The notes under the pieces are model-generated. The model was not told the DNA's origin, searched no databases, and saw nothing but the letters and a program-made list of their open reading frames with translations. The position numbers and the translations under genes are program-made. From Octopus sinensis (Eukaryota): a stretch of 64,000 nucleotides of DNA. Below are positions 2,689 to 50,619 of the stretch, piece by piece; position 1 is the stretch's first letter; each line of letters begins with the position of its first letter. The DNA lies in contig NC_043001.1 in NCBI RefSeq assembly GCF_006345805.1, positions 62,248,001 to 62,312,000 of the forward strand, in the 5' to 3' direction.

Positions 2689-2752
2689 GTTCCGATAAAA
2701 TTGTGTTTTACACACGAAAAGAAAGTGCAAAAAAGGAAAGAAATAGAAATGG

Positions 2753-4950
2753 TTACTTGTTGTTCGAAAGTCCTTTGTTTTTCACCTCACGGTCTTCTTC
2801 TATGAGGCTTTTGTATAGTTCTTTTGATGAATACTTTTGAAATCTCCCTACTGCATCAGGGTAAAGAGATTTCAGGGTGCTGTATGTGTTCTGTGTTACG
2901 TGTATTATTTTAATGTGTTGTGGTGGTGTTGTGCGTGGGTGGTTATGTTGGTGTTTGACCTAATGTGTTCCATTAGGTCGTGGTTGTTTGTGTTTATGGC
3001 TGTCAACATTGTTGGGGGGTTTGATGATGGTGTGTTTGTGTTGATGTGTTTGTTTTCTGTGGATGTTTTTGTTTCGGGAGTGGTGTATCTTCCTGCTTTG
3101 TTTGTTATCTTTTCTTTTCTTTTTTTCCCCTTTTTCTTCTCCCCCCTGTGGCAATTTGCCAATCTTCTGTGTCTTCTTCGTCTAATGACAAATCAGAAGA
3201 ATCAGAGCTTGGAAGAGGGAAAATATTGGGGTCTATTGTAGACTGTGTTGATTTTGTTGTTGGTGTTGGTTGTTGAGCGTTTGGTTGTGGTGTATGCGGT
3301 TTTGGAGGTGGGGTGTGGGTATTTTGTGTTTGAGTGATTGTAGGTATTGTTGTGCTGTTTGGGGTCTCAATTTTGTGGGGATTTGGAGTAGTCATTGTTT
3401 CTTCATTTTCGCTGAGTGTCTTTTTGGCAGATGTCCTTGGTTTGGGAGTTGGTTTATTCTTGGTTGTTGTTGTTGTTGGTGATGTTGCTTCTGTTCCTGG
3501 TGCAGTTGGTGTGGTTGTTTGGTTGGTGAGGTTTGTTTTTTGTTGGTTTCTGTGATTAGTCCTGTTCGTGCAAAACGTGGTGTGGGTAGTAAACCTGGTT
3601 TATTTGTTTTTTCCGGCTGTTGTTGTTGTTGCTGTTGTTTTCTTGCGGCAGATTTGCAGTCTTTTTTTAGGTGTTGCTCACTACCGCATATGTAGCAACG
3701 TGGTCTTCTGCCATCGACGACCACATACAACTTGTGGTCTTCTGATACATATATCTGGGTGGGTATTTTTTTTATGTCTTCTTGATTTACGTGTAGTAGA
3801 AATTCTACTTTTTTTCCCCACCCAGTTTTTGTGTTCCGTGACCGTGGTTTCTAAAATATTGAAATTTTTCATTTTTACACATAAGGCCTTTACTAGCCAT
3901 AGATTATTAGCTATTTTTGGGACATTGTTTAAAGTGATCTTAGTCACTTTCTGTCCCCGATAGCTTGGTGTTAATGTAAGTTCATCTGAATGAAGAGTTA
4001 GCGTTGAGAAACGTCTTGCTAACTCTTTAGCGTGGAAAACCACTTGTATGTGTGCGAACTTGTTCCACCAGGTCACATAGTCTTTGTAGTTCCAGATGGG
4101 TTTCAAGCATTTTTCTATTTTGCTTGTGTTAGCCTTCTCTGGGCTTTTTGTTTTCTTATTAATTATTTTATAAATAATTGTTCTTTTTTTTCATCTTCTA
4201 ATATTTCTTCTGGTATGTTTATTTTTACTATACCATCTAATTCTGTTATTGTAATGTTCGTGTCTTGTATTTGTTGAGCAGTAAAATATACTGTTGTTTT
4301 TTTTCTTTAATCGCCTCAGCGAAATTTGTTGTTGTTTTGTTATTGTTGTTGCTGGTGGTGATGTTGTTGTTGGCTGCAGTTTGTAAAATTGGTGTGTTTG
4401 GTTCGATTGTGCAAGTAGGAAGGGGTGGAAAATTATTTTCATAATTTATCCGTGTATTCGAGCAGCTTTTGTCAATTTGTTTGGTGGTTACAGTCTTTTG
4501 TTTATTCACTTCAGTTCTTGTTGTTGGAGTAAAACAGGTCTGAACGGAATTGTTGTGGTTGTTATTGTTGTTTTTGTTGTTGGTGGTGGTGTCAGTGGAA
4601 GAAGAGACAGCCGAGGCAGCAGATGTCGAAATGGTGGCGCAAATTTTATTTTTGTTGTCATTGTTATTGTTGTTGTTGTTGGTAGTTGAGGTAGTGGATG
4701 AGGTGGCGGCGGTTGTGGTGGTGGTGGTGGTGGTGAAGGCGGTGGTGGTAACAGTAGTAGTCTCTATGTTGTTCTTGCTAGTGGCGGTGTTGGTGACAGG
4801 GCCACAAGTAGTTGTAGCGTTCATTGCAAAGTCATTGATGATTTTACTTTGCGCGCAAAAATTCTTTTTTTCTCCTAGCGTTTCCAGTCTAGGAGAAAGC
4901 TGGTCGATAAAGGAACGCGACCATCGTTCTACAATATAATTTCTTGACAT
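2753..4950 (-). pseudogene. ORF1 (Gag-like nucleic acid-binding protein) of Tx1 copy A, frameshifted
   Basis: Starts MSRNYIVERWSRSF like copy B. Fragments 4246-5034, 3681-4106, 3392-3730 and 2905-3395. The C-terminus read manually (IKIIHVTQNTYSTLKSLYPDAVGRFQKY...) matches the copy B C-terminus. Confidence 0.85.
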
Positions 4951-5147
4951 TTTGAAAATGTCGAGAAAGAAATTACAAAAATTAAATAGGGTTGAAACTG
5001 CCCCTAGGGGCGAATTCCTCCCTTGGAAAAGCACTCAAACGAAATTTGGGTGCCTTACACAACTTATTTACAAAAATGTACACAAAAATTGGGCTATAAG
5101 TAGTCAAAATAAACGATTACCTTCGGAGTCGAAGTGACAGCACGTCC

Positions 5148-5155
5148 ATAGACAG

Positions 5156-5244
<89 letters not shown>
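5148..5244. repeat. (GATA)n microsatellite separating Tx1 copies A and B
   Basis: Direct reading of about 22 perfect GATA units plus a degenerate left edge. Confidence 0.98.
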
Positions 5245-5245
<1 letters not shown>

Positions 5246-5541
5246 CTTTTTATTGTAGCCACACAGGGCTAAACACAGAATAAAATGGACGAAATACAAT
5301 GTAGAATTTTTTCTTTTCGAGGTGGGATGGGTGGGGCACAAAAAAAGAAAAAAAAACACGTTTGATCAATAGGGATCTGTGGTTGTGTGGTGTATAAAGA
5401 AGCAATATATATATATATATAAGGTTCACAGTTTAGGTGTAGCCTTGGAAAGAAAAACCTACAAAAAAGACCAAGGTCACCTCAGACAATTCGAAAAAGA
5501 ACACATGAGTAAGTCGCCTTACTTCTCGTTGTCTCTTTTGG

Positions 5542-8500
5542 TTACAGATTTATGCTTAAAATAGTGTCGTCTTTCATACTGACCATTTTTGCCACTTTTA
5601 CCCACTTTTTATTAAAACATTCGTTCGACAAAGCCTTCCTCTCTATTCTCATCCTCCTTTTCAAGTGGTACTTGAAAAAGTTGACGAGAGACTGACCAGA
5701 GAGGAAGGTGTTTGTTTGCAGTCCTTTCAAACGCGTCCACCACACACATTCTTTCGCCATAGCCATCAGCGTAACGAAAACCGTTTTCCCTTCCCGTTTA
5801 AAGGAAGGTGGTGGAACGATATCCACGATAGACTCGGCCGATAGGCGAGCCCGACCTACACGTGACAACAGCTGTTCGACGAAGGACCACAGCTCTGAAA
5901 TATCTGGACACTGCACGAGTGCGTGCAGAACGGTTTCGTCGCTCTGACTGCATCTCGGGCAGGTCGGTCCGGTGATGGTTTTCGAACCGTGTCTGTAGCT
6001 CTTCTCTCGAACAGGTAGTGCTTCTCGATAGCACTGCCAAGCCAGGGATTTCTGGAAGTTATCCATAGGCCCCGGCCCGAACGTCGTCCTGAACAGGCGG
6101 GTTAGGAATTATTCGTCGACGCCCAGGTTTGCCCCGAGTGTGTCGTCGGACCTCCCCTCCACTAGTCCTCTATAGAACGCTTTAGTCGTTTGTAAGTTGC
6201 ACAAGTTTGACACCGGTCGGCAGAGCTGCTGTAGAGCTTGGCGACACTCTCGGTGCCAATCGCCCAGTTTCGGTCTCTTTTTGATCCACGTTTGCAGTTC
6301 GGTCAGTGAGACGAGCTGCGTGAAGTCGCGCCTCACAAACGGCGCCCAAACCTGTTCACCGTCGTCGATGAATTTCCAGAGATGTCGCAGTCTCAGCGCA
6401 TGCCTGCGCATCATCAACCACGGCATGCCCAGTCCTCCATTCAACGGATGTTGACTGCAAATGGACTTCCTCACCATCGGAACGCCACCCTTCCACAAGA
6501 AGCGGAAGAGTATGCGTTCCAGTTTGGTGATGGTGGCGTCGGGACAAGGTACGACGATCAGGCGGTAATCGATGACGGATGCGATGTACGCGTTCGCCAC
6601 CTCCGCCCGGCCTTTTAGAGACAGCTTTCTCTCGGCCCATGTTTGGCTGAGAGCGACCACTCTACTCGTGATCTCGTCCCAGTTCTTATCCATTTGGAGG
6701 TCCGGACTGAACCAGACCCCGAGCAATTTAACCGGTCCGTCCGTCCAGCGTCCCACTACTGAGTCGCAGTCGGACGGCATGGGCTTGCTTCTCCAGGTGC
6801 CGAGTAGCAAACCCACTGACTTTTCCGGGTTAATCTTTGCTCCCGTCACCGTTTCGTATTTTCTTAGTGTCTCGCCTATCATCTTGATGTGTTTGTCGCT
6901 CGACACTATGACGGTGACATCGTCCGCATATGCCGACACGCTCGTCCCGCAACCCAGTTCCCGTGGGATGCCCCTCAGTGTCGCCAGGTTCCGCAGTAGC
7001 GGCTCGAGAGTCAATACATACAGAAGCGCCGACAGGGGACACCCCTGACGGACCGAACGCGTGATGTCAAACGGTTTCGACAGGTGACCGTTCACCCGAA
7101 TCACCGATCGGATGCCGCTATACAAGGCAGCGATCCAACCGCGGAAGACGGGACCGAAGCCAGCCGCCCTAAGGACGGCCGCCAAGTACCGATGGTCGAC
7201 CCTATCGAAGGCTTTAGACTGATCCAAATTGATCAGCGCCCCACCCATGCCAGGATCCTGAACTACCCTGTCCACAATATAGCGCATCAGATGGAGGTTG
7301 TCATGTATGGTTCTGCCCGGCACGGCGCACGTTTGCGCCCTGTCGACCAGTTTACCAATGACAGGCGCCAACCTCTCGGCTATTACTTTGGCCAAAATTT
7401 TCAAATCTGCGTTGAGCAGAGTGATGGGCCTGAAATTATCTATAAAATTCCCCTTGTTTGGGTATTTCTTCAGCAACGTCACTGCACCTCGGCTCACGAA
7501 ACCGGGGATTCTCCCGTTTTGTTGCCAGTTGCAGTAGACTGATGCCAAGAGGTCGCCAAACAAGTCTGGCATTCGACAATACAGCTCGTAGGGTAAACCA
7601 TCCAATCCAGGCGACTTATCCCTCGCGCAGCCCGCCATCGCATCCCACACGTCAGCGGCTGTGATGGGACTTTCACAACACTCCGCTTCTCTTGCCGAGA
7701 GCCGCGGCAGGTCGGTCAGGTAGGCACTGAAATCCATCCCGCCTTCCGACCCACCACTCGCACCAAACAGTCGAGCAAAGTGCTGTTGAAAGGCCTCACA
7801 CATCCTTTCGGGTTCGAGTAAACTGCATCCCTGTTGATCTATTAGAGACCGAATGGTGGCTCTGTTGCCACGCTGCGCCTCCGCTACCCGGGCCTCTCGC
7901 GCAGCTTCAATCCCTTCGTTCCTTAAGGCACGCATTTTAGCTCTGACGACGCAACCTTCGTGCTTGGCGTTGAGGTGTTGGTCGAGGGCCATCCTCGCAG
8001 CCAGCACCTTGGTTGCGCTGCCAGTGGTAAGTGCCTCTTCTAGTTTCTTAACTAAGTCTCCCTCTACTCTATTTCGTTCTATCGCTAATTCCTTGCTAAA
8101 CCTAATTGATTCCGATTTTATTGCCATTTTCAGGGCGTACCACCAGCGGTTGTTAACGACCGCTCCCGTCAGCGCCCTCTTAATTAACTCGCTAATCCAG
8201 TCCCTGTAAACCTGTCGCGCTAACAGCGACGTGTTCAGTTTCCAGTAACCGGGACCCTGCCTATGTGTTTTATCTAAGTCGAGCGTACACGTAACAAATT
8301 TGTGATCTGTGTAGCTGACTATTTTAAATTGTGGACATCCTACACTATCCCTATCCGCTGTCCTGCATAGAATTCTATCTAGATAAGATCTCGACGATCC
8401 GACGCGGTTTGTCCAAGTCCACGTTGGCACGTTCGGATGGTCGAGTCGGAACCTGTCAGACAAATGGAAACGTCTGAGCAGGTCTTTGAGGCTATTACAC

Positions 8501-8991
8501 CCCCTTCTATTCCTATCCCTTCCCACATAATCTAGATGCGTGTCCAAGGTAGCGTTCCAATCCCCTACTAACAGTAAAGGTCTAGACGTACCCAGGAAAA
8601 CCTCTAGACGTCTGAAGAAATCCGCCCGACCCGTTAAGGACGGTGCATAAACTGCCATCAGACGGAATGCACACCCATTTCTGCCATCCACGTCCAAGAC
8701 AACCCGCCTACTCTCCGGGTCTAGGAATATTGCTCTTACTTTTACCTTTAGACTCTTTCGAAAAAGCACCGCAGTACCTCCACCACCCATGTTAGGCAGA
8801 CAGGGAGAAAAATAAATGTCAAATTGCTTGCCAAACATGGACTCGAGGGCCCGCGGCTTACTGAGTCTGGTTTCACTGATAGCTACTATATCTACGTCCA
8901 GTGATTTGATGTCGTTTAGAAGGTAACCTTGCTTCCAAGCCGATGCCAAGCCACGCACATTCACACAACCTAATTTAAGCATACTTGACAT
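5542..8991 (-). CDS. ORF2 of Tx1 copy B: APE endonuclease, RT and C-terminal CCHC finger; one in-frame TAA at 6109-6111
   Basis: ORFs 6109-8991 and 5542-6066 are in the same frame, joined by 14 sense codons after a single stop. Motifs: YADD, QGCPLS, CPRCSQSDETVLHALVQC. Confidence 0.93.
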
Positions 8992-9048
8992 TTACGAAAA
9001 TTGTGTTTTACACACTACATTAGAAGAGACAAGAAGCAAGAAGGGAGG

Positions 9049-10941
9049 TCACTTACTCATTTTAAAAGTTTCATTTTTTTCCTCTTCTTTTGTATTGTTT
9101 TTGATGAGGTGTTTGTATAGTTTTTTCGACAGGTATCGTTGATACCCGCCTACCGCATTCGGAAATATTGTTTTCAGTATGTGGTGTTGTGCTTGTGTTA
9201 TGTGTAAAATTCTGATGTGTTTCGGTGGTGTGGTGTGCGGATAATTGTTTGTCTTAAAGTCATCTTCACAGATGACCATGTTGGATGTGATGTAGTCCAT
9301 TAATTCTTTATTGCCTGTGTCTATTGCAGTTAGTTGTGTGTGTGGTTTTACGGGTTCATTACTTTTTTGATTGTCTAGGGGGATGTTGTCCTGTGTTAGA
9401 TATCTCCCTGCTTTACTTCCTTGTTTGGTGGATTTTTTGGATCTTTTTCTTTTACCCCCTGTGGCTATTTGCCATTCCGTCGAACTTTCGTCGTCCGACG
9501 TATCAGTATGGGGTAGAGGCAAATCATTTGCATTACTATGTATGCTTGTATAGATTGTTGATGTTTTGTGCGGTGTTTGTGTTGTTGTGGTGTTAGGGGT
9601 AGCATTTGTCTTCTCGTCACTGTTTTCTGTCTTTTTAATTGTCATCCTAGGTGTGGGTGTTGGTCTATTTTTTGTTGATTCAACATGTTTAATTGGTTGT
9701 GAAGTCAACGGTGATTGTGTTGGTACTGTTTCTTTTCTTGGTGATGTTGTTGGGACTTGTTTGCTGGTTAGTTGTTTTTCTTGGCATTGTTCCATAATTG
9801 AGTGTGTTGGTGTTGGTGTTGGCAACAAAGGGATTTTATTTGTTTTCTGATTTGTTCTTTCTTGTTTTTCCTGTACCAGATCGCACTTGGCAATTAAATG
9901 TTCGGGGCTGCCACATTTGTAGCATCTAGGCTTTTTGCCTTCTGCCACAACATATAAGCATTGCCCATTTTCCAAGTGGATCTTATCCGGTAGGCTCTCG
10001 ATAGAGGCTCCCTCAATCTGTATGGTCACCACTATTGTCTTCCCACCCCAAATGTCGCCAGGGTACACGGCGGTTTCTAAAATATTGATATTTTTTAAAT
10101 GGTAACAGATTACCCCTGTTATCCATTTGTTAGGAAGCTCCGGAGGTACATTTTTAATAGTGATTCGACTCACTCTCTGGTTTTTATAGTATGGGACCAT
10201 GATGATTTCCTCATTTCCCAGAGACTCAGTAGAGTGAGCTTTTGCCACTTCCTGGTTAGGGAAGCGGACCACTACTGTGTTAAACTGGGGACTCCAGTTT
10301 ATATATTCTTTTTCTTTCATTATGTTTTTTAAGCATTTTTCCACATCAGTTTTTGTAATCTGTTCATTTAGTTTTTTGTTTTTTCTAATAATTTTATATA
10401 TAATTGTCTTATTTTTTATTTCTTGCTTTATGTGTTGAGGTGTATGCAGCACTAAATCTTGTCCACGTGTTGTAAAGAGAGCTCTTGTTTCTATGAGCTC
10501 TTCATTTGTAAATGTTACGATCTCCTTCTTCTGGCGAAGAGTGTCAGCGAAATTTACTGTTGTTGATTTTTTTGTATTAACATCTTCACTATTAGATAGT
10601 TCATTTTTATTGTTGTTCTTGTTGTTGCTGTTGTTTTTGTCAATAGTTTTCGTGTGAGTTTTATTTTTATCATTTATGTTGGTCGTGGTAGTGGTGGTGG
10701 TGGTGGTGGTGGTGGTGGTGGTAGCAGTATTAGTCTCGTTGTTGCTGTTGTTAGTGGTCGTGGTGGTGGTGGCGGTGGTGACAGGGCTGTTACCGCACGT
10801 GGTTGCAGCCTTCATTTCACCGATATTCATGTTTGCACTTGGCGTGCGTACGTTCTTTTTTTCTCCTAGTGCTTCCAAACTAGGAAAATGTTGGTCAATA
10901 AAAGAACGCGACCAGCGTTCTACAATAAAATTTCTCGACAT
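9049..10941 (-). CDS. ORF1 of Tx1 copy B, 630 aa, intact
   Basis: Thr/Asn low-complexity N-terminus, RRM-like middle region, knuckle CYKCGSPEHLIAKC. Lies directly upstream of ORF2. Confidence 0.9.
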   Translation of the reverse strand: MSRNFIVERWSRSFIDQHFPSLEALGEKKNVRTPSANMNIGEMKAATTCGNSPVTTATTTTTTNNSNNETNTATTTTTTTTTTTTTTNINDKNKTHTKTIDKNNSNNKNNNKNELSNSEDVNTKKSTTVNFADTLRQKKEIVTFTNEELIETRALFTTRGQDLVLHTPQHIKQEIKNKTIIYKIIRKNKKLNEQITKTDVEKCLKNIMKEKEYINWSPQFNTVVVRFPNQEVAKAHSTESLGNEEIIMVPYYKNQRVSRITIKNVPPELPNKWITGVICYHLKNINILETAVYPGDIWGGKTIVVTIQIEGASIESLPDKIHLENGQCLYVVAEGKKPRCYKCGSPEHLIAKCDLVQEKQERTNQKTNKIPLLPTPTPTHSIMEQCQEKQLTSKQVPTTSPRKETVPTQSPLTSQPIKHVESTKNRPTPTPRMTIKKTENSDEKTNATPNTTTTQTPHKTSTIYTSIHSNANDLPLPHTDTSDDESSTEWQIATGGKRKRSKKSTKQGSKAGRYLTQDNIPLDNQKSNEPVKPHTQLTAIDTGNKELMDYITSNMVICEDDFKTNNYPHTTPPKHIRILHITQAQHHILKTIFPNAVGGYQRYLSKKLYKHLIKNNTKEEEKNETFKMSK

Positions 10942-11140
10942 TTTCTAATGTCGAGAAGAAAATTACAGAAATGAAATGGGGTTGAAACTGCTCCTAGGGG
11001 CGAATTCCTCCCTTGGAAAAGCACTCAAACGAAGGTTGGGTACCTTACACACCTTATTTGCAAAAATGTACACAAAATATGGGCTATAAATAGTCAAAAT
11101 AAACGATTACCTTCGGAGCCGATGTGACAACACGTCTGTC

Positions 11141-20690: not shown

Positions 20691-20708
<18 letters not shown>

Positions 20709-20789
20709 AACTAGGAGCTACTATTCATATTATTTATCTTGTATATTACTTCTGAATTTGTAGTTTTTACATTTCTGATATGATTCTAG

Positions 20790-23873: not shown

Positions 23874-24465
23874 AGGCGGCAAGCGGACAGAATTGCAAGC
23901 ATTCTGCATGAAATGCTTAGTTGTATTTCGTCTGCCGTTACGTTCTGAGTTCAAATTCCGCCGGGTCGACTTTACCTTTCATCCTTTCGGGGTCGATAAA
24001 CTAAGTACCAGTTACGCACTGGGGGTCGATGTAATCGACTTAATCTGTTTGTCTGTCCTTGTTTGTCCCCTCTGTGTTTAGCCCCTTATGGGTAGTAAAG
24101 AAATAGGTATTTTGTCTGTTTCCACGTTCTGGGTTAAAATTCCGCCGAAGTCGATTTTGCCTTTCATCTTTTCGGGGTCGATAAATTAAGTACCGGTAGA
24201 CACTGAGGCTGATGTAATCGACTAGACCCCTCCCTCCAAAATTTCGGGCTTTGTGTTTTCAGTAGAAAGGAATATTATTACTGTTTATATCGAGATAATA
24301 GAATTGTTATCTACCCACACCGGACAAAAATCTTAGTGGCATTTCTTTTGGCTATACGTTTTAAGTTCAAATTTCGCCGATTGACTTTGCCTTTCATCTT
24401 TTCGGGTCGATAAAATTAAGTACCAGTTGTAATCGCTAACCTTTTGCTGAAATTAGAAAGAATAA
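23874..24465 (+). mobile_element. Composite SINE cluster; the first copy carries a Tx1-type 3' tail at 24064-24105
   Basis: SINE body, then TGTCCCCTCTGTGTTTAGCCCCTTATGGGTAGTAAAGAAATA, then two further partial copies. Confidence 0.8.
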
Positions 24466-33086: not shown

Positions 33087-33164
<78 letters not shown>

Positions 33165-41196: not shown

Positions 41197-41340
41197 TCAT
41201 AGTATCTAAACACATTGAGAATTTGGGGGGAGTTATAGAACTTGTTGCACAATTGGATCTATTTCTAGTGGGTCACTTGAAAACATTTAGCAATCACAGA
41301 AGTGGTAAACATTGTCAGTTTCTCTATCAGCAACCTGAAT
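41197..41340 (+). mobile_element. hAT transposase fragment, similar to 51684-51790
   Basis: NLGGVIELVAQLDLFLVGHL resembles the hAT/DUF4371 motif GNFLGLIELLAxxDxxLxxHL; nucleotide match to about 51690. Confidence 0.7.
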
Positions 41341-42669: not shown

Positions 42670-43111
42670 GGTGAAGGTGAACCCAAAGCTGTATGGTGAC
42701 GACGTGAAAGGCGTCATTATAGACAAAGAGACATATATAAAACTAAAAAAGATGTTTAATGCCATACACATAACGCATTATGTGCGGTATGATAAATTGC
42801 CAGATGTTATAGAGCAAACGGAGCTGTTGGATTATATGACGGACGAGCGTCTAATGTAAAAGAATTGTAAAATTTAAAGTTGTATTTTGATTATACGTAA
42901 TGTTGACATGTAGAATTGTAAAATTATTGTAACTGCAAAATTGTATGTATAATTGTATTTTAAACGGAACTGCGAGTTGGGGGTTCGTAAGCCGTTCCAT
43001 CTCATTACATCTAATTCATTTTTTACTTCATACTTTATTTTTATTTTATGTTCCCCATGTCCCGTCTTGTAATGTCCCCCTCTTCGTAGCCCCTTGTGGG
43101 TAATAAAGAAA
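42670..43111 (+). mobile_element. 5'-truncated, slightly diverged copy of the ORF1-only element (last about 62 codons plus complete 3'UTR)
   Basis: Matches the array unit 3' end; amino-acid differences NAIH/NAMH and EQTEL/EHTDL; ends TAGCCCCTTGTGGGTAATAAAGAAA. Confidence 0.93.
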
Positions 43112-43703
43112 TACGTCTTAGGCTTTTAGTTCTTTTAAGAGCTAAGTCTCTGAACACACAGAGCATACTCGACCAAGTTCCAGTTCGAAAGGCAGGCGAC
43201 CACCATTAATACAAGATGTTACAGATACCTCTTATACTGTTAGTGTGAATTATCACCATGAAGAACGGTTACAGGATATCTATAACTAGAGAAAAATAAC
43301 CAAGCAGAACATATGATGAAGACGCAGCGAAAACCAAGCGCCAAACATCGAAGATTGATTTGTACACAGACGACTACAGATTCAGCTATAGCGGTTAGGT
43401 GAAATTCTCGCCACGGAAAAAACGGCTACAGTAACATATCTGGAAGTATGTTCATATCAAGAGAAAGATAAACACAACGAGTGATTCAACGAGTGATTCC
43501 TGCGATACGCAATATCTTGATATGGAACTCTTACGCTGTACCTCATAAACGGTAAATCAATTATCTGTTCTTGGGTTCTAGTTTCTTCTAAGAACTACCT
43601 TAAGCCATCTGTTATTACCTGTTGCTAGGCCGATACCAACAACATGAACTGTGAATCAAATTCCATCGTCATTTCACTGGTCAGTACCTTTTTACGCCTA
43701 ACG

Positions 43704-44971
43704 AACATCTGGTAATTTATCATACCGCACATAATGCGTTATGTGCATGGCATTAAACATCTTTTTCAATTTTATATATGTCTCTTTGTCTATAATGACG
43801 CCTTTCACGTCGTCACCATACAGCTTTGGGTTCACCTTCACCCTGACCAACCCTTTCTTACCTACTAGTCTCTTCTCCACTTCTGTATTCTTGATATACA
43901 TTACAACTGCCTTCAAGTTTTTTCCTGTCGGCCTTCTTCCATATCTGCACGATTCCAATTGCTCGTTCACTCTTTTCTCCCATTCTTTTTCAAACTCTGT
44001 CCTTGGCCGCTCTCTCACTTCTCTTTTACTTCCTGTTCTTTGTCTTCTCTCTCTTCTGCTATCTTGCTTTTAATTTTCTTCTTTTTTTGATCTTTCGGTG
44101 GTGATTCCACCCTTGATCTTTTCCTGTCTTCCGTCTTTTCCTCTTCTGCACTCTCTCGTTCTTCCTCACTTAACCGCTCCTCCATTCGTACTTCCTCCGC
44201 TTTCGCCTCCTCCACACACGCGTCCTCCATCACAACCTCCGGTGCTTTAGTTTTTTCTCGCGGGCACACATCCTTCATGTGGCCCCTTGATTTACAATTG
44301 TAGCAAATTGGGGGTCTTCCCTCTACCACAACTCGGAGCCGCGTCTCGTCAGGGTAGACCAGCTCCTCTGGGATGTTGTACAGGTCTCGCACGGTAATGT
44401 GTGCGAGAACCTGCACCGTATATCCCCACCATTTCACCTCCGCTGACTTCTCCACCTTCAGTACTTCCACATCATCCTTGCAGTTAAACAGCACTGCTGC
44501 CAGCAACCTTTCCATATTAAATTCGGGTGAGATTCTATTGATTCTCATCCTCACTGCTCTCCTTCCGCAGTAACTTGGTAGCAAAGTCCACTTATCCGAT
44601 TTCAAAAGTCTTGTTGCGTTCTTTTTTGCCTCATTTTCTGTTTCAAAATATACCACTACCGTGGCATACTTCCTTCCTCTTTTGAAAAATGTGGGTTCAC
44701 CCTCAATTTCCTTCAGACATTCTTCTACTTCTTTCATTTCCGCTACTTCAATTTTTTTCGACTCCACACACCACGTCCTGTACGTTATAGTACGCTTCTC
44801 TGCACTGCTTTCCTCCTCCTCGGACGGTGTGACTCTTACGCAGTCACCCTCCCTCTTTAAACTGTCGAAATACTTCTGTAGGGTCTTCTGTTCGACCACC
44901 ACCTCCTCCATTTCCAGCTCGCCGGCAACCAGGCCTTTGCCTGCCGCTCGCGCGTAAGTCTGTTCTTGCAT
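43704..44971 (-). pseudogene. ORF1-like gene of unit 1 (1-bp deletion near 44018; 3' end lost)
   Basis: Split into ORFs 44015-44971 and 43698-44018; homology stops at 43704. Confidence 0.88.
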
Positions 44972-45356
44972 TTTCAGGAAAAAAATTATTCCACGTCCTC
45001 CAACGAATTCGAACTCACCACCTCTTCACTTGAAAAAACACACCAGAATAATCACACCTGAATAACTCCAAATAACTCACTCAAAGACTAAAAGCCTGAG
45101 ACGGTTTCTTTATTACCCACTAAGGGGCACGAAGAGGGGGACATTACAAGACGGGACATGGGGAACATAAAATAAAAATAAAGTATGAAGTAAAAAATGA
45201 ATTAGATGTAATGAGATGGAACGGCTTACGAACCCCCAACTCGCAGTTCCGTTTAAAATACAATTATACATACAATTTTACAGTTACAATAATTTTACAA
45301 TTCTACATGTCAACATTACATATATTCAAAATACAACTTTAAATTTTACAATTCTT

Positions 45357-46676
45357 TTACATTAGACGCTCGTCCGTCATATAATCCAACAGGTCTGTAT
45401 GCTCTATAACATCTGGTAATTTATCATACCGCACATAATGCGTTATGTGCATGGCATTAAACATCTTTTTCAATTTTATATATGTCTCTTTGTCTATAAT
45501 GACGCCTTTCACGTCGTCACCATACAGCTTTGGGTTCACCTTCACCCTGACCAACCCTTTCTTACCTACTAGTCTCTTCTCCACTTCTGTATTCTTGATA
45601 TACATTACAACTGCCTTCAAGTTTTTTCCTGTCGGCCTTCTTCCATATCTGCACGATTCCAATTGCTCGTTCACTCTTTTCTCCCATTCTTTTTCAAACT
45701 CTGTCCTTGGCCGCTCTCTCACCTTCTCTTTTACTTCCTGTTCTTTGTCTTCTCTCTCTTCTGCTATCTTGCTTTTAATTTTCTTCTTTTTTTGATCTTT
45801 CGGTGGTGATTCCACCCTTGATCTTTTCCTGTCTTCCGTCTTTTCCTCTTCTGCACTCTCTCGTTCTTCCTCACTTAACCGCTCCTCCATTCGTACTTCC
45901 TCCGCTTTCGCCTCCTCCACACACGCGTCCTCCATCACAACCTCCGGTGCTTTAGTTTTTTCTCGCGGGCACACATCCTTCATGTGGCCCCTTGATTTAC
46001 AATTGTAGCAAATTGGGGGTCTTCCCTCTACCACAACTCGGAGCCGCGTCTCGTCAGGGTAGACCAGCTCCTCTGGGATGTTGTACAGGTCTCGCACGGT
46101 AATGTGTGCGAGAACCTGCACCGTATATCCCCACCATTTCACCTCCGCTGACTTCTCCACCTTCAGTACTTCCACATCATCCTTGCAGTTAAACAGCACT
46201 GCTGCCAGCAACCTTTCCATATTAAATTCGGGTGAGATTCTATTGATTCTCATCCTCACTGCTCTCCTTCCGCAGTAACTTGGTAGCAAAGTCCACTTAT
46301 CCGATTTCAAAAGTCTTGTTGCGTTCTTTTTTGCCTCATTTTCTGTTTCAAAATATACCACTACCGTGGCATACTTCCTTCCTCTTTTGAAAAATGTGGG
46401 TTCACCCTCAATTTCCTTCAGACATTCTTCTACTTCTTTCATTTCCGCTACTTCAATTTTTTTCGACTCCACACACCACGTCCTGTACGTTATAGTACGC
46501 TTCTCTGCACTGCTTTCCTCCTCCTCGGACGGTGTGACTCTTACGCAGTCACCCTCCCTCTTTAAACTGTCGAAATACTTCTGTAGGGTCTTCTGTTCGA
46601 CCACCACCTCCTCCATTTCCAGCTCGCCGGCAACCAGGCCTTTGCCTGCCGCTCGCGCGTAAGTCTGTTCTTGCAT
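45357..46676 (-). CDS. ORF1/Gag-like protein, 439 aa (unit 2)
   Basis: Knuckle CYNCKSRGHMKDVC. Aligns by eye with Tx1-B ORF1: TITY/TIIY, VEECLKEI/VEKCLKNI, TVVVYF/TVVVRF, LRVVVEGRPPICY/LYVVAEGKKPRCY. Confidence 0.9.
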   Translation of the reverse strand: MQEQTYARAAGKGLVAGELEMEEVVVEQKTLQKYFDSLKREGDCVRVTPSEEEESSAEKRTITYRTWCVESKKIEVAEMKEVEECLKEIEGEPTFFKRGRKYATVVVYFETENEAKKNATRLLKSDKWTLLPSYCGRRAVRMRINRISPEFNMERLLAAVLFNCKDDVEVLKVEKSAEVKWWGYTVQVLAHITVRDLYNIPEELVYPDETRLRVVVEGRPPICYNCKSRGHMKDVCPREKTKAPEVVMEDACVEEAKAEEVRMEERLSEEERESAEEEKTEDRKRSRVESPPKDQKKKKIKSKIAEEREDKEQEVKEKVRERPRTEFEKEWEKRVNEQLESCRYGRRPTGKNLKAVVMYIKNTEVEKRLVGKKGLVRVKVNPKLYGDDVKGVIIDKETYIKLKKMFNAMHITHYVRYDKLPDVIEHTDLLDYMTDERLM

Positions 46677-47063
46677 TTTCAGGAAAAAAATTATTCCACG
46701 TCCTCCAACGAATTCGAACTCACCACCTCTTCACTTGAAATAAACACACCAGAATAATCACACCTGAATAACTCCAAATAACTCACTCAAAGACTAAAAG
46801 CCTGAGACGGTTTCTTTATTACCCACTAAGGGGCCACGAAGAGGGGGACATTACAAGACGGGACATGGGGAACATAAAATAAAAATAAAGTATGAAGTAA
46901 AAAATGAATTAGATGTAATGAGATGGAACGGCTTACGAACCCCCAACTCGCAGTTCCGTTTAAAATACAATTATACATACAATTTTACAGTTACAATAAT
47001 TTTACAATTCTACATGTCAACATTACATATATTCAAAATACAACTTTAAATTTTACAATTCTT

Positions 47064-48386
47064 TTACATTAGACGCTCGTCCGTCATATAATCCAACAGG
47101 TCTGTATGCTCTATAACATCTGGTAATTTATCATACCGCACATAATGCGTTATGTGCATGGCATTAAACATCTTTTTCAATTTTATATATGTCTCTTTGT
47201 CTATAATGACGCCTTTCACGTCGTCACCATACAGCTTTGGGTTCACCTTCACCCTGACCAACCCTTTCTTACCTACTAGTCTCTTCTCCACTTCTGTATT
47301 CTTGATATACATTACAACTGCCTTCAAGTTTTTTCCTGTCGGCCTTCTTCCATATCTGCACGATTCCAATTGCTCGTTCACTCTTTTCTCCCATTCTTTT
47401 TCAAACTCTGTCCTTGGCCGCTCTCTCACCTTCTCTTTTACTTCCTGTTCTTTGTCTTCTCTCTCTTCTGCTATCTTGCTTTTAATTTTCTTCTTTTTTT
47501 GATCTTTCGGTGGTGATTCCACCCTTGATCTTTTCCTGTCTTCCGTCTTTTCCTCTTCTGCACTCTCTCGTTCTTCCTCACTTAACCGCTCCTCCATTCG
47601 TACTTCCTCCGCTTTCGCCTCCTCCTCCACACACGCGTCCTCCATCACAACCTCCGGTGCTTTAGTTTTTTCTCGCGGGCACACATCCTTCATGTGGCCC
47701 CTTGATTTACAATTGTAGCAAATTGGGGGTCTTCCCTCTACCACAACTCGGAGCCGCGTCTCGTCAGGGTAGACCAGCTCCTCTGGGATGTTGTACAGGT
47801 CTCGCACGGTAATGTGTGCGAGAACCTGCACCGTATATCCCCACCATTTCACCTCCGCTGACTTCTCCACCTTCAGTACTTCCACATCATCCTTGCAGTT
47901 AAACAGCACTGCTGCCAGCAACCTTTCCATATTAAATTCGGGTGAGATTCTATTGATTCTCATCCTCACTGCTCTCCTTCCGCAGTAACTTGGTAGCAAA
48001 GTCCACTTATCCGATTTCAAAAGTCTTGTTGCGTTCTTTTTTGCCTCATTTTCTGTTTCAAAATATACCACTACCGTGGCATACTTCCTTCCTCTTTTGA
48101 AAAATGTGGGTTCACCCTCAATTTCCTTCAGACATTCTTCTACTTCTTTCATTTCCGCTACTTCAATTTTTTTCGACTCCACACACCACGTCCTGTACGT
48201 TATAGTACGCTTCTCTGCACTGCTTTCCTCCTCCTCGGACGGTGTGACTCTTACGCAGTCACCCTCCCTCTTTAAACTGTCGAAATACTTCTGTAGGGTC
48301 TTCTGTTCGACCACCACCTCCTCCATTTCCAGCTCGCCGGCAACCAGGCCTTTGCCTGCCGCTCGCGCGTAAGTCTGTTCTTGCAT
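47064..48386 (-). CDS. ORF1/Gag-like protein, 440 aa (unit 3; one extra Glu)
   Basis: Same as unit 2, with CVEEEAK. Confidence 0.9.
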   Translation of the reverse strand: MQEQTYARAAGKGLVAGELEMEEVVVEQKTLQKYFDSLKREGDCVRVTPSEEEESSAEKRTITYRTWCVESKKIEVAEMKEVEECLKEIEGEPTFFKRGRKYATVVVYFETENEAKKNATRLLKSDKWTLLPSYCGRRAVRMRINRISPEFNMERLLAAVLFNCKDDVEVLKVEKSAEVKWWGYTVQVLAHITVRDLYNIPEELVYPDETRLRVVVEGRPPICYNCKSRGHMKDVCPREKTKAPEVVMEDACVEEEAKAEEVRMEERLSEEERESAEEEKTEDRKRSRVESPPKDQKKKKIKSKIAEEREDKEQEVKEKVRERPRTEFEKEWEKRVNEQLESCRYGRRPTGKNLKAVVMYIKNTEVEKRLVGKKGLVRVKVNPKLYGDDVKGVIIDKETYIKLKKMFNAMHITHYVRYDKLPDVIEHTDLLDYMTDERLM

Positions 48387-48774
48387 TTTCAGGAAAAAAA
48401 TTATTCCACGTCCTCCAACGAATTCGAACTCACCACCTCTTCACTTGAAATAAACACACCAGAATAATCACACCTGAATAACTCCAAATAACTCACTCAA
48501 AGACTGGAAGCCTGAGACGGTTTCTTTATTACCCACTAAGGGGCCACGAAGAGGGGGACATTACAAGACGGGACATGGGGAACATAAAATAAAAAATAAA
48601 GTATGAAGTAAAAAATGAATTAGATGTAATGAGATGGAACGGCTTACGAACCCCCAACTCGCAGTTCCGTTTAAAATACAATTATACATACAATTTTACA
48701 GTTACAATAATTTTACAATTCTACATGTCAACATTACATATATTCAAAATACAACTTTAAATTTTACAATTCTT

Positions 48775-50094
48775 TTACATTAGACGCTCGTCCGTCATAT
48801 AATCCAACAGGTCTGTATGCTCTATAACATCTGGTAATTTATCATACCGCACATAATGCGTTATGTGCATGGCATTAAACATCTTTTTCAATTTTATATA
48901 TGTCTCTTTGTCTATAATGACGCCTTTCACGTCGTCACCATACAGCTTTGGGTTCACCTTCACCCTGACCAACCCTTTCTTACCTACTAGTCTCTTCTCC
49001 ACTTCTGTATTCTTGATATACATTACAACTGCCTTCAAGTTTTTTCCTGTCGGCCTTCTTCCATATCTGCACGATTCCAATTGCTCGTTCACTCTTTTCT
49101 CCCATTCTTTTTCAAACTCTGTCCTTGGCCGCTCTCTCACCTTCTCTTTTACTTCCTGTTCTTTGTCTTCTCTCTCTTCTGCTATCTTGCTTTTAATTTT
49201 CTTCTTTTTTTGATCTTTCGGTGGTGATTCCACCCTTGATCTTTTCCTGTCTTCCGTCTTTTCCTCTTCTGCACTCTCTCGTTCTTCCTCACTTAACCGC
49301 TCCTCCATTCGTACTTCCTCCGCTTTCGCCTCCTCCACACACGCGTCCTCCATCACAACCTCCGGTGCTTTAGTTTTTTCTCGCGGGCACACATCCTTCA
49401 TGTGGCCCCTTGATTTACAATTGTAGCAAATTGGGGGTCTTCCCTCTACCACAACTCGGAGCCGCGTCTCGTCAGGGTAGACCAGCTCCTCTGGGATGTT
49501 GTACAGGTCTCGCACGGTAATGTGTGCGAGAACCTGCACCGTATATCCCCACCATTTCACCTCCGCTGACTTCTCCACCTTCAGTACTTCCACATCATCC
49601 TTGCAGTTAAACAGCACTGCTGCCAGCAACCTTTCCATATTAAATTCGGGTGAGATTCTATTGATTCTCATCCTCACTGCTCTCCTTCCGCAGTAACTTG
49701 GTAGCAAAGTCCACTTATCCGATTTCAAAAGTCTTGTTGCGTTCTTTTTTGCCTCATTTTCTGTTTCAAAATATACCACTACCGTGGCATATTTCTTTCC
49801 TCTTTTGAAAAATGTGGGTTCACCCTCAATTTCCTTCAGACATTCTTCTACTTCTTTCATTTCCGCTACTTCAATTTTTTTCGACTCCACACACCACGTC
49901 CTGTACGTTATAGTACGCTTCTCTGCACTGCTTTCCTCCTCCTCGGACGGTGTGACTCTTACGCAGTCACCCTCCCTCTTTAAACTGTCGAAATACTTCT
50001 GTAGGGTCTTCTGTTCGACCACCACCTCCTCCATTTCCAGCTCACCGGCAACCAGGCCTCTGCCTGCCGCTCGCGCGTAAGTCTGTTCTTGCAT
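48775..50094 (-). CDS. ORF1/Gag-like protein, 439 aa (unit 4)
   Basis: Same as unit 2, with two conservative K/R changes and two synonymous changes seen. Confidence 0.9.
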   Translation of the reverse strand: MQEQTYARAAGRGLVAGELEMEEVVVEQKTLQKYFDSLKREGDCVRVTPSEEEESSAEKRTITYRTWCVESKKIEVAEMKEVEECLKEIEGEPTFFKRGKKYATVVVYFETENEAKKNATRLLKSDKWTLLPSYCGRRAVRMRINRISPEFNMERLLAAVLFNCKDDVEVLKVEKSAEVKWWGYTVQVLAHITVRDLYNIPEELVYPDETRLRVVVEGRPPICYNCKSRGHMKDVCPREKTKAPEVVMEDACVEEAKAEEVRMEERLSEEERESAEEEKTEDRKRSRVESPPKDQKKKKIKSKIAEEREDKEQEVKEKVRERPRTEFEKEWEKRVNEQLESCRYGRRPTGKNLKAVVMYIKNTEVEKRLVGKKGLVRVKVNPKLYGDDVKGVIIDKETYIKLKKMFNAMHITHYVRYDKLPDVIEHTDLLDYMTDERLM

Positions 50095-50619
50095 TTTCAG
50101 GAAAAAAATTATTCCACGTCCTCCAACGAATTCGAACTCACCACCTCTTCACTTGAAATAAACACACCAGAATAATCACACCTGAATAACTCCAAATAAC
50201 TCACTCAAAGACTGGAAGCCTGAGACGGATATTTGTCTGAGAACCCTTGTTTTATAAGGTTTATGTGGCTCCCAATGAACTTCAGAAATGGAAAGCTGTG
50301 ATTGGCTGCTTGGAACTATGGCGCGAAAATAAACGGAGGCAAATCGCCCCAAGTGATAACCAGCGGTGCGAACGTAGTAGAGACCAACGTGTCAGCCAAT
50401 CGAATTAGTGTTTACAACAATGTTGAACTAGCCGAAGATGTTTGTAATCTCGACCGAGGTTATTCCTAATACTCATCTCAAACAGTGAAGATAGCAATGA
50501 GAGACGATATTGCTACACACCCATGTTTGCATATCCCGAATCTTCGGTCACATGGTCCAATTACATTACACCAGAATTTCATTAATTTGTCACCTGATAG
50601 CCGGGTCATCATCAAGAGA

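What the first reader, a model, noticed from the sequence alone, without database searches (positions are those of the whole stretch)
43704..50228. Tandem array of a 1.7-kb ORF1-only (Gag-only) Tx1-derived retroelement, HAL1/HeT-A-like
Seen: four head-to-tail near-identical units, each with a short 5'UTR, one 439-440-aa ORF, and a 3'UTR with AATAAA. No RT or endonuclease is present. The protein aligns with the ORF1s of the Tx1 LINEs in this window across the RRM-like region and the CCHC knuckle. Three ORFs are intact, and the substitutions I saw in unit 4 are synonymous or K/R. Known: ORF1-only non-autonomous LINE derivatives exist (mammalian HAL1 from L1; Drosophila telomeric HeT-A, which forms head-to-tail arrays). 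Inference: this is an independent Tx1-derived equivalent that supplies its own RNP chaperone and borrows ORF2 in trans. I do not know of one described in molluscs. The alternative is a domesticated ORF1 gene (L1TD1-like) amplified in tandem.
Basis: partly seen in the sequence, partly recalled or inferred. Interest (0 to 1): 0.9.

Follow-up and report, generated by a model that had tools for sequence, protein, structure and literature searches.

The report
Octopus ORF1-only LINE-derived retroelement, tandem array
This is a recent head-to-tail array of a 1.7-kb octopus mobile element that keeps only a LINE's RNA-binding ORF1 protein and carries the 3' tail shared by local LINEs and SINEs, so it most likely spreads by borrowing their reverse transcriptase; this kind is known from mammals (HAL1) and flies (HeT-A) but I found no cephalopod report.

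Summary
On the minus strand at 43704-50228 lie three complete 1706-1710-nt units, 99.5-99.6% identical, plus a fourth that is 3'-truncated and frameshifted. An inverted partial copy at 42670-43135 was not reported.

Each unit has one 439-440-aa ORF with no RT or endonuclease. The protein has two RRM-like domains, a CCHC knuckle and a conserved C-terminal domain. It is homologous to the ORF1 of the L1/Tx1-like LINEs in the window.

Three new lines of evidence favour a non-autonomous retroelement over a domesticated gene:
- **Shared tail.** The last 60 nt match the 3' tail of an autonomous LINE in Octopus sinensis (49/57) and of the tRNA-like SINE (44/55).
- **Dispersed relatives.** ORF1-only relatives occur in O. 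bimaculoides, O. sinensis and O. vulgaris, solitary or in arrays. None has an ORF2, several are bracketed by 16-22-nt direct repeats, and many are decayed.
- **Old lineage.** These proteins form one clade, so the ORF1-only state is old.

The likely partner is not the (GATA)n-specific LINE of this window. How arrays form is unresolved. Tx1 membership is plausible but was not tested by phylogeny. This is a new member of a known kind, of moderate interest.

The parts
48521..50228 (-). Unit U1 (1708 nt), first in transcription order; intact ORF 48775-50094 (439 aa; K12R and R100K relative to U3)
46811..48520 (-). Unit U2 (1710 nt); intact ORF 47064-48386 (440 aa; +GGA gives one extra Glu)
45105..46810 (-). 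Unit U3 (1706 nt); intact ORF 45357-46676 (439 aa): two RRM-like domains, CCHC knuckle (residues 223-236), acidic/basic linker, conserved C-terminal domain
43704..45104 (-). Unit U4 (1401 nt), 3'-truncated at unit position 1406; two 1-nt deletions, one of which shifts the frame (remaining ORF 44015-44971, 318 aa); no 3'UTR
46811..46870 (-). 3' tail of a unit (the same sequence ends U1 at 48521-48580 and U3 at 45105-45164): ...GTCCCGTCTTGTAATGTCCCCCTCTTCGTGGCCCCTTAGTGGGTAATAAAGAAA. It is shared with octopus LINEs and SINEs and includes a 4-bp hairpin (GCCC/GGGT) just 5' of AATAAA.
50207..50228 (-). 22-nt sequence CCGTCTCAGGCTTCCAGTCTTT that starts every unit and recurs after the tail of the inverted copy. 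It is either a target-site duplication repeated between units or the element's own 5' end (terminal redundancy).
42670..43135 (+). Inverted partial copy, 96-97% identical by BLAST: last 62 codons, 3'UTR, tail (...AATAAAGAAATA), then ~22 nt of a unit start (CGTCTTAGGCTTTTAGTTCTTT). It is either the array's original 3' end turned by an inversion or a separate 5'-truncated insertion.
50229..50400 (-). Unique upstream flank that looks like a pol II promoter: TATAAAA at -28, CCAAT at -77, ATTGG at -48 and -172 relative to the start of U1. It is not repeated before the other units.
23877..24112 (+). tRNA-like SINE copy whose 3' tail (...TGTCCCCTCTGTGTTTAGCCCCTTATGGGTAGTAAAGAAATA) is homologous to the unit's tail (44/55)
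5245..11140 (-). L1/Tx1-like LINE-B: ORF1 9049-10941 (630 aa) and ORF2 6109-8991 (960 aa; endonuclease plus RT, with a premature stop before the C-terminal Cys-His region). It sits between (GATA)n tracts at 11141-11220 and 5157-5244.
1..5156 (-). LINE-A, a degenerate relative of LINE-B (about 80% nt identity). Its 5' end abuts the (GATA)n tract at 5157-5244 and its 3' end runs off the window.

Best explanation
**What it is.** The array is made of copies of a non-autonomous, ORF1-only derivative of an L1/Tx1-like LINE lineage of octopods.

**Shown.**
- Each 1.7-kb unit encodes only an ORF1-type RNA-binding protein: tandem RRM-like domains, a CCHC knuckle and a C-terminal domain.
- Each unit ends in the ~55-60-nt 3' tail that autonomous LINEs and tRNA-like SINEs of octopus genomes also carry.

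**Inferred mechanism.**
- The unit's mRNA is translated into ORF1 protein, which coats it in cis.
- The ORF2 protein (endonuclease plus RT) of a LINE with the same tail recognises that tail. The best candidate is the lineage seen in O. sinensis locus L005.
[quoted passage not shown] **The array.** At this locus one insertion became four or more units very recently (units differ by 0.5% or less). Its downstream end was then damaged by truncation of U4 and by an inverted partial copy. Candidate routes, which I could not separate:
- unequal exchange between the flanking 22-nt repeats;
- repeated insertion into the regenerated site;
- reverse transcription of multi-unit or template-switched RNAs.

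Head-to-tail joining recurs in this family and in its parent LINEs, so a family-specific route is plausible.
For: **Coding content.**
- ORF1-only: the sole Pfam hit is a CCHC knuckle (E 0.0019, below Pfam's cut-off) and no RT or EN appears in any frame.
- ORF1 homology: E 1e-18 to the window's LINE ORF1.
- 382 relatives at E<=1e-3. The 21 looked up carry either octopus names or, for two Logan-only clusters, no name.
- AF2 model: pLDDT 76-91 over residues 21-240. The best Foldseek hits are tandem-RRM proteins (SFPQ/NONO, hnRNP A1 UP1, U2AF65), probability ~1.

**Shared 3' tail (last 60 nt of the unit).**
- O. sinensis ORF1-only unit G0: 51/53.
- O. sinensis autonomous LINE LN1: 49/57.
- LN2 and LN3: about 45/55.
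- SINEs: 44/55.
- All of these give z 10-23 and 0/200 shuffles.
- SINE tail against the inverted copy: 26/27, E 2e-7.
- The tail is far better conserved than the protein (37% aa identity to G0).

**Relatives elsewhere, none with an ORF2.**
- L005 G0: 1.70 kb with a perfect 16-nt flanking repeat.
- L004: 17/19 repeat.
- L003: 19/22 repeat.
- L006: lies in an intron of a WTAP-like gene.
- L002: 5'-truncated and interrupted by SINEs.
- A SINE with the same tail has a clean 14-bp target-site duplication.

**Decay, as expected of a mobile element.**
- O. bimaculoides copies A and B share an in-frame TAA, and copy C is frameshifted.
- In the window, U4 is frameshifted.

**Phylogeny.** ORF1-only proteins with a short N-terminus form one clade (72% bootstrap). 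The window unit sits in a 91% subclade with copies from O. sinensis and O. bimaculoides.

**Recurrent head-to-tail joining.**
- O. bimaculoides L001 has three units, with the same join right after AATAAAGA.
- L003 is a partial tandem.
- L005 has four autonomous LINEs in tandem.
Against: - No copy of this exact family outside the 64-kb window could be examined in the source genome. Mobility of this subfamily is therefore inferred from relatives at 27-52% aa identity.
- No RNA, piRNA or insertion-polymorphism data were available.
- The array itself shows no unambiguous target-site duplication. Its downstream end is rearranged, and the 22-nt repeat has two possible readings.
- The flank upstream of U1 looks like a real pol II promoter: TATA at -28 and three CCAAT boxes within 172 nt. 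That would suit a host gene.
- Three intact ORFs are compatible with selection. At 0.5% divergence or less they are also expected by chance.
- The LINEs present in the window have a poorly matching tail (36/49, z 1.8). No partner was seen in this genome.
- Five same-orientation matches lie upstream of both the window array and the O. bimaculoides array. They could mean a conserved locus rather than independent insertions. That region also contains LINE fragments.
Confidence: 0.75

Rival explanations
1. A domesticated ORF1-derived host gene (L1TD1-like), amplified in tandem at this locus. It would be transcribed from the promoter-like flank upstream of U1 and kept for a cellular or defence function.
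For: - TATAAAA at -28 and CCAAT boxes at -77, -48 and -172 upstream of U1. By my own estimate from the counts, about 0.002 would be expected by chance for each feature.
- Three intact ORFs.
- RefSeq models relatives as genes in O. bimaculoides and O. sinensis.
- Possible shared upstream sequence with the O. bimaculoides array.
Against: - Only U1 has the promoter-like flank.
- The units keep a LINE/SINE 3' tail that a host gene has no reason to conserve: 51/53 to a copy in another species whose protein is only 37% identical.
- Relatives are dispersed, bracketed by direct repeats, truncated, interrupted by SINEs, and carry stops or frameshifts, including a stop shared by both young O. bimaculoides units.
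- Intactness at 0.5% divergence or less says nothing about selection.
- The junction sequences of the two arrays are unrelated.
Confidence: 0.1
2. A purely local tandem duplication (a satellite-like expansion) of a dead LINE fragment that happens to contain ORF1. On this view the 1.7-kb unit never moves as such.
For: - Units are nearly identical, and the same 22-nt sequence separates them, as unequal exchange would leave.
- The O. bimaculoides units were amplified after acquiring a stop codon.
Against: - The unit boundaries are not arbitrary. They coincide with the LINE/SINE tail end and with a 5' end in the same register as in other family members.
- Discrete 1.7-kb ORF1-only copies with flanking repeats exist at unrelated loci in other species.
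- The ORF1-only proteins form an old clade distinct from the sampled LINE ORF1s.
Confidence: 0.08
3. An assembly artefact: one unit, or fewer than four, mis-assembled into an array.
For: Near-identical 1.7-kb repeats are hard to assemble, and no reads were available to check.
Against: - Each unit has private differences: the GGA insertion, 1-nt indels, and four substitutions in U1. A CC/TT variant is shared by neighbouring units.
- An independent assembly of another species shows the same arrangement.
Confidence: 0.03

Closest known systems
HAL1 (half-L1) of mammals
   Same: A non-autonomous LINE derivative that encodes only ORF1p, arose from an autonomous LINE lineage, and persisted as its own family (PMC5753468, citing Smit 1999 and Bao & Jurka 2010). 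Here too the ORF1-only state is old and has diversified. It also arose at least twice: G0 groups with the LINE ORF1s.
   Different: - The parent is not mammalian L1. ORF1 is of the RRM-CCHC type, not the coiled-coil/RRM/CTD type: no Pfam ORF1 family hit and a tandem-RRM fold.
- The 3' end is a specific conserved tail shared with SINEs, not a poly(A) tail.
- Copies tend to sit head-to-tail.
HeT-A of Drosophila telomeres
   Same: A Gag-only non-LTR element that depends on another element's RT and occurs in head-to-tail arrays, so that one element's 3' end abuts the next one's 5'UTR (PMC5537684).
   Different: - This locus is not telomeric: no telomere repeats, and ordinary repeats on both sides.
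- The junctions carry no oligo(A).
- The element comes from a different clade.
- A promoter in the 3' end is untested here.
- Solitary interstitial copies exist.
SINE-LINE pairs with a shared 3' tail (stringent-type LINEs such as zebrafish ZfL2 and eel UnaL2)
   Same: The non-autonomous element carries the partner LINE's 3' tail, which in those systems the LINE's ORF2 protein recognises (PMC4176376). Here the same tail sits on a LINE, a tRNA-like SINE and the ORF1-only unit. Every tail can form a small hairpin next to the AATAAA.
   Different: This passenger is 1.7 kb and protein-coding, so it is presumably a pol II transcript rather than a pol III tRNA-derived one.
Sequence-specific Tx1-clade LINEs (targets in multicopy genes and microsatellites)
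   Same: The window's two LINEs each sit in a (GATA)n tract and follow one another head-to-tail. Their ORF2 is collinear with L1 ORF2p. Named relatives are labelled 'Transposon TX1' by their source.
   Different: The ORF1-only units and the SINEs are not in microsatellites. Their tail matches a different, related LINE lineage better. Clade membership was not tested by RT phylogeny.

Membership tests
ORF1-only non-autonomous LINE derivative (HAL1-type, in the broad sense) | A single ORF homologous to a LINE ORF1, with no ORF2 (RT/EN) | tested here: met
   Pfam gives only CCHC. tblastn with the window's ORF2 finds nothing in the array. BLASTP to the LINE ORF1 gives E 1e-18.
ORF1-only non-autonomous LINE derivative (HAL1-type, in the broad sense) | A 3' end shared with an autonomous LINE that could mobilise it | tested here: met
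   49/57 identity of the last 60 nt to O. sinensis LINE LN1, which has ORF1 and ORF2 (z 22); 44/55 to SINEs. The partner was not seen in the source genome itself.
ORF1-only non-autonomous LINE derivative (HAL1-type, in the broad sense) | Dispersed copies with insertion hallmarks (flanking duplications, 5' truncation) | tested here: inconclusive
   Met for relatives in three other octopus genomes: 16/16, 17/19 and 19/22 flanking repeats, a 5'-truncated copy and an intronic copy. For this exact subfamily only the 64-kb window was available.
HAL1 proper (mammalian L1-derived) | Derived from L1 with an L1-type ORF1p (coiled coil, RRM, CTD) | tested here: not met
   The protein is tandem RRM plus a CCHC knuckle, and the host is an octopod.
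HeT-A-like telomeric Gag-only element | Arrays confined to chromosome ends | tested here: not met
   No (TTAGGG)n in the window. Interspersed repeats and other elements lie on both sides.
HeT-A-like telomeric Gag-only element | A promoter in the 3' end of one unit drives the next unit | not testable with these tools
   No transcript data. Only U1 has a recognisable TATA/CCAAT flank.
HeT-A-like telomeric Gag-only element | Oligo(A) at each junction | tested here: not met
   The junction reads ...AATAAAGAAA|CCGTCTCAGG with no A-run.
Tx1 clade of non-LTR retrotransposons (parent lineage) | RT phylogeny places ORF2 within Tx1 | not tested
   No reference set was available. Indirect evidence: ORF2 is collinear with human L1 ORF2p (E 4.5e-56). 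The only named homologues are 'Transposon TX1 uncharacterized 149 kDa protein', a name given by the source (E 2e-93).
Tx1 clade of non-LTR retrotransposons (parent lineage) | Sequence-specific insertion | tested here: inconclusive
   Both window LINEs lie in (GATA)n. The ORF1-only units and the SINEs do not.
Domesticated ORF1 gene (L1TD1-like) | A conserved orthologous locus under purifying selection that has lost the hallmarks of a mobile element | tested here: not met
   The LINE/SINE tail is retained. The relatives examined carry stops or frameshifts. Synteny with the O. bimaculoides array is unproven. dN/dS is uninformative at 0.5% divergence or less.

The most novel reading that the evidence does not exclude
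The family may propagate as arrays. In this reading, transcripts start at a unit's 5' end and are cleaved about 20-25 nt past the AATAAA, that is, inside the next unit. The RNA would then carry the same ~20-nt sequence at both ends, a retrovirus-like terminal redundancy. This would explain three things:
- why every complete copy examined (window, L003, L004, L006, G0) has its tail followed by 16-22 nt resembling its own start;
- why first units of arrays are 5'-truncated (L001, L003);
- why both the ORF1-only elements and their parent LINEs sit head-to-tail at interstitial sites.

Arrays would arise from multi-unit read-through RNAs or from RT template switching between redundant ends. Each unit would depend on its upstream neighbour for expression, as HeT-A does ('promoting in tandem'), but away from telomeres.
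Probability: 0.25. Interest if true: 0.7.

Novelty: new member of a known kind. Interest (0 to 1): 0.5.

Why it matters
ORF1-only LINE derivatives are well documented in only a few lineages, such as mammalian HAL1 and Drosophila HeT-A. This family is a third, independent case, in a mollusc with a very repeat-rich genome. Here one 3' tail sits on an autonomous LINE, a SINE and a protein-coding passenger.

- **A testable system.** That trio would allow tests of what the tail does and what a LINE's ORF1 protein contributes in cis, with SINE and passenger sharing one tail.
- **Annotation.** Several octopus 'uncharacterized protein' and 'CCHC-type domain-containing protein' gene models appear to belong to this family and should probably be treated as repeats.
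- **Arrays.** The recurring head-to-tail arrangement may show how retroelements seed tandem repeats.

Tried and rejected
- **Word-indexed protein search** with the 439-aa protein found nothing. The exhaustive representative search was needed.
- **Exact-sequence look-ups** failed for the window's ORF1-only protein, its LINE ORF2, and the UniRef-only proteins P0002 and P0003. The source species therefore stays unidentified beyond 'octopod'.
- **Rfam and tRNA scans** of the window were empty. No RNA-gene target is nearby.
- **PDB sequence search** with the family profile gave only CCHC-knuckle matches.
- **Synteny with O. bimaculoides L001.** Five same-orientation matches lie upstream of both arrays, but they are not fully collinear and the region contains LINE fragments. 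I left this unresolved.
- **Homology of 5' ends.** The test on the window unit, L004 and the O. sinensis LINEs was not significant by score (best z 2.1, 18/300 shuffles). Only the shared register is suggestive.
- **TSD versus element-encoded 5' end.** The 22-nt repeat can be read either way, and I could not decide.
- **The window's LINE-B as partner.** Rejected as the best candidate, because the tail match is weak.
- **dN/dS within the array.** Rejected as uninformative, because there are only four coding differences.
- **The tail hairpin.** Pairing is kept through five different stems, but my flexible search would find a 4-bp stem by chance in about a third of random sequences (my own estimate; no shuffle control was run). 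I treat it as suggestive only.
- **Catalogues and literature.** Repbase and Dfam could not be queried. Literature searches found no description of such an element in cephalopods. Bao & Jurka 2010 was not held.

Full report
**1. The observation**

The interval 43704-50228 holds a head-to-tail array on the minus strand. Direct-repeat analysis gives four copies spaced 1704-1711 nt apart. The motif CCGTCTCAGGCTT marks unit starts at 50228, 48520, 46810 and 45104.
- Three units are complete (1708, 1710 and 1706 nt) and 99.5-99.6% identical.
- Each complete unit has about 134 nt of 5'UTR, an ORF of 439 or 440 aa, and about 250 nt of 3'UTR ending ...GGGTAATAAAGAAA. The next unit follows directly, with no A-run.
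- The fourth unit (45104-43704) stops at unit position 1406, inside the C-terminal coding region. It has two single-base deletions, one of which shifts the frame and leaves a 318-aa ORF.
It differs from the others by two synonymous changes plus K12R and R100K.
- An inverted partial copy lies at 42670-43135 and was not reported. It is 96-97% identical. It covers the last 62 codons, the 3'UTR, the tail and about 22 nt of a following unit's start.

**2. The protein**

Pfam finds only a weak CCHC knuckle, and no RT or endonuclease appears in any frame of the array.
- The protein aligns with the 630-aa ORF1 of the LINE at 9049-10941: 27% identity over 197 aa, E 1e-18. It also aligns with the degenerate ORF1 of the neighbouring LINE.
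- An AlphaFold2 model built on 18 relatives is confident over residues 21-240 and 350-430. Its best PDB matches are tandem-RRM proteins (SFPQ/NONO, hnRNP A1 UP1, U2AF65) at probability ~1.
- The architecture is therefore two RRM-like domains, a CCHC knuckle, a charged linker and a small C-terminal domain.
- The alignment shows that the C-terminal domain is also present in the long LINE ORF1s. The array's protein and its closest relatives simply lack the 100-300-aa N-terminal extension and begin at a conserved (T/S)YA motif.

**3. The genome and the family**

An exhaustive HMMER search found 382 relatives at E<=1e-3. I looked up 21 of them. All named ones come from Octopus bimaculoides, O. sinensis or O. 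vulgaris; two Logan-only clusters carry no name. The window shares SINE-like repeats at 77-89% identity with loci from those genomes. The window is therefore from an octopod, and the best protein match is only 48-52% identical.

I fetched six loci around annotated relatives. Neither the array in L001 nor the ORF1-only copy in any of L002-L006 continues into an ORF2.

| Locus | Species | What is there |
|---|---|---|
| L001 | O. bimaculoides | Three ORF1-only units head-to-tail. The first is 5'-truncated. The first two are ~97% identical and share an in-frame TAA. The third belongs to a diverged subfamily and is frameshifted. The A/B junction again falls right after TAATAAAGA. |
| L002 | O. sinensis | A 5'-truncated copy interrupted by SINEs. 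|
| L003 | O. vulgaris | A full unit preceded by the last ~50 nt of another unit; a 22-nt repeat (19/22) follows both tails. |
| L004 | O. vulgaris | A solitary 1.7-kb copy bracketed by a 17/19 repeat. |
| L005 | O. sinensis | An ORF1-only unit (G0, 1.70 kb) with a perfect 16-nt flanking repeat, followed by four autonomous LINEs head-to-tail. |
| L006 | O. sinensis | A solitary copy in an intron of a WTAP-like gene. |

**4. The key new evidence: a shared 3' tail**

A SINE inserted in L002 has a clean 14-bp target-site duplication. It ends ...GTCCCCTCTATGTTTAGCCCCTTGTGGGTAGTAAAGAAATA, which is visibly the end of the array's unit.

Identity to the unit's last 60 nt:

| Compared with | Identity | Note |
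|---|---|---|
| O. sinensis ORF1-only unit G0 | 51/53 | protein only 37% identical |
| O. sinensis autonomous LINE LN1 | 49/57 | |
| LN2 and LN3 | about 45/55 | |
| SINEs (window and O. sinensis) | 44/55 | |
| Window's (GATA)n-specific LINE-B | 36/49 | z 1.8, 13/200 shuffles |

The first four rows give z 10-23 and 0/200 shuffles.

Every tail can form a 4-bp hairpin immediately 5' of the A(A/G)TAAA. Five different stem sequences keep the pairing. This is suggestive only, because the search was flexible.

A tail shared by a LINE, a SINE and this element, and conserved far better than the coding sequence, is the signature of recognition by the LINE's RT. That mechanism is established for stringent-type LINEs (PMC4176376). 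It is inferred here, not shown.

**5. Lineage**

I built a neighbour-joining tree of the RRM-CCHC region (201 columns, 100 bootstraps).
- The short ORF1-only proteins form one clade (72%). It has two strong subclades (99% and 91%).
- The window unit groups with copies from O. sinensis and O. bimaculoides.
- G0 groups instead with the ORF1s of the adjacent autonomous LINEs (90%). ORF2 loss therefore happened at least twice.
- The ORF1-only state is old and has diversified.

**6. The parent LINEs**

The window's two LINEs each abut a (GATA)n tract and follow one another head-to-tail. Other (GATA)n tracts in the window are empty.

Their ORF2 is collinear with human L1 ORF2p (E 4.5e-56). The only named homologues are coral proteins that their source calls 'Transposon TX1 uncharacterized 149 kDa protein'. 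Together with the RRM-CCHC ORF1, this fits the Tx1 clade. No RT phylogeny was done, so I call the lineage L1/Tx1-like.

**7. How the array arose**

This is unresolved. The sequence CCGTCTCAGGCTTYYAGTCTTT (~22 nt) starts every unit and recurs after the tail of the inverted copy. The structure is therefore R-[body-tail-R]n. There are two readings.
- **(a) R is a target-site duplication.** Its length fits the 14-22-nt repeats seen elsewhere. The array would come from unequal exchange between the two copies of R, or from repeated insertion into the regenerated site.
- **(b) R is the element's own 5' end.** It lies in the same register as the 5' ends of L004 and of the O. sinensis LINE LN4, although the similarity is not significant by score. 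The RNA would then be terminally redundant, because cleavage about 20-25 nt after AATAAA falls in the next unit. Arrays would come from read-through or template-switched RNAs.

Several observations make a family-specific route plausible: the 5'-truncated first units in L001 and L003, and head-to-tail arrays of diverged autonomous LINEs in L005 (75-89% identity between units). Simple unequal crossing-over after one insertion nevertheless explains this window well enough. The units differ by 0.5% or less, so the amplification or homogenisation is very recent.

**8. Rivals**

*A domesticated gene.*
- For: the flank upstream of U1 looks like a real promoter, with TATAAAA at -28 and CCAAT boxes at -77, -48 and -172. 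Each feature is improbable by chance on the window's own frequencies. Three ORFs are intact.
- Against:
  - only U1 has that flank;
  - the units keep the LINE/SINE tail;
  - the relatives examined are dispersed and decayed;
  - the O. bimaculoides units were amplified after acquiring a stop;
  - intactness at this divergence carries no information about selection.
- The promoter-like flank remains unexplained. The array may have landed behind a host promoter, which could make this locus a transcribed source copy.

*Other rivals.* A purely local satellite-like duplication is contradicted by discrete 1.7-kb copies at unrelated loci. An assembly artefact is unlikely given the unit-specific differences, but it needs long reads to exclude.

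**9. Comparison with known systems, and novelty**
- **HAL1.** Functionally this is the closest analogue: an L1 derivative encoding only ORF1p that arose repeatedly (PMC5753468). This element is not HAL1 itself. It has a different parent, a different ORF1 type and a specific tail instead of poly(A).
- **HeT-A.** It shares Gag-only coding and head-to-tail arrays (PMC5537684). It is not telomeric and has no oligo(A) at the junctions. A 3'-end promoter is untested.
- **SINE-LINE tail sharing.** The tail sharing puts it alongside these partnerships, with a protein-coding passenger.
- **Literature.** I found no description of such an element in cephalopods in the searchable literature. Repbase and Dfam could not be checked.
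- **Verdict.** I rate it a new member of a known kind, of moderate interest. The possible array-based propagation is the part that could raise its interest.

Noticed in passing
window 1-5156 and 5245-11140 (minus), (GATA)n at 5157-5244 and 11141-11220: Two related L1/Tx1-like LINEs (about 80% nt identity) each begin right next to a (GATA)n microsatellite and follow one another head-to-tail. This looks like a microsatellite-specific LINE. LINE-B's ORF2 has a premature stop before its C-terminal Cys-His region. (GATA)n tracts at 14352-14426 and 33090-33161 are unoccupied.
   Followed up: partly
window 50229-50400 (minus strand): The flank upstream of the first unit is promoter-like: TATAAAA at -28, CCAAT at -77, and inverted CCAAT at -48 and -172. 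It is not part of the repeat unit, and its origin (a host promoter or chance) is unexplained.
   Followed up: partly
window 23877-24112 (+); further partial copies near 12960-13121, 15941-16104, 16216-16378 and 24124-24194: A tRNA-like SINE (B-box-like GGTTCAAATTCC) is abundant in the window and in O. sinensis and O. bimaculoides loci. Its 3' tail is the one carried by the ORF1-only element and by O. sinensis LINEs.
   Followed up: partly
L005 (O. sinensis CM016867.1) 2487-20850: An ORF1-only unit is followed by four autonomous LINEs (ORF1 and ORF2), all head-to-tail. The LINE units are only 75-89% identical to each other. Tails join directly (0-35 nt) to CTGAATACTCGTCAT. The parent LINEs therefore also form interstitial arrays.
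   Followed up: partly
L001 (O. bimaculoides CM046605.1) 10795-10800 and 12303-12308: Both young units of the O. bimaculoides array share an in-frame TAA (GKVDF*NIRTILFY). After it, the C-terminal domain stays open for 87 codons. The RefSeq model XP_052823997.1 ends at this stop.
   Followed up: partly
window 58439-59659 (minus) and 19477-20614 (minus): A different retroelement family: an ORF with an RT fragment followed by a PHD-type finger, plus a degenerate relative (about 60% aa identity). An RT C-terminal fragment also lies at 53856-54570 (+).
   Followed up: no
window 52234-56012 versus L001 2146-6621: Five same-orientation matches (65-84% identity) lie upstream of both the window array and the O. 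bimaculoides array. They could reflect shared ancestry of the two loci or a shared mobile element. The order is not fully collinear.
   Followed up: partly
tails of 14 of the 15 elements compared (for example window 46811-46835 minus, 5245-5275 minus; L004 11620-11650); the Obim_GO_A slice stopped short of its hexamer and was not scored: A 4-bp hairpin lies immediately 5' of the A(A/G)TAAA hexamer, with different but still pairing stems: GCCC/GGGT, AGCC/GGCT, AGGC/GCCT, AGGC/GTCT and GGGC/GCTC. It may be an RT-recognition hairpin.
   Followed up: partly
window 41194-41326 and 51679-51796 (+): A ~130-nt repeat (84% identical) in direct orientation flanks the array region on both sides, about 10 kb apart. 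It is probably an interspersed repeat.
   Followed up: no
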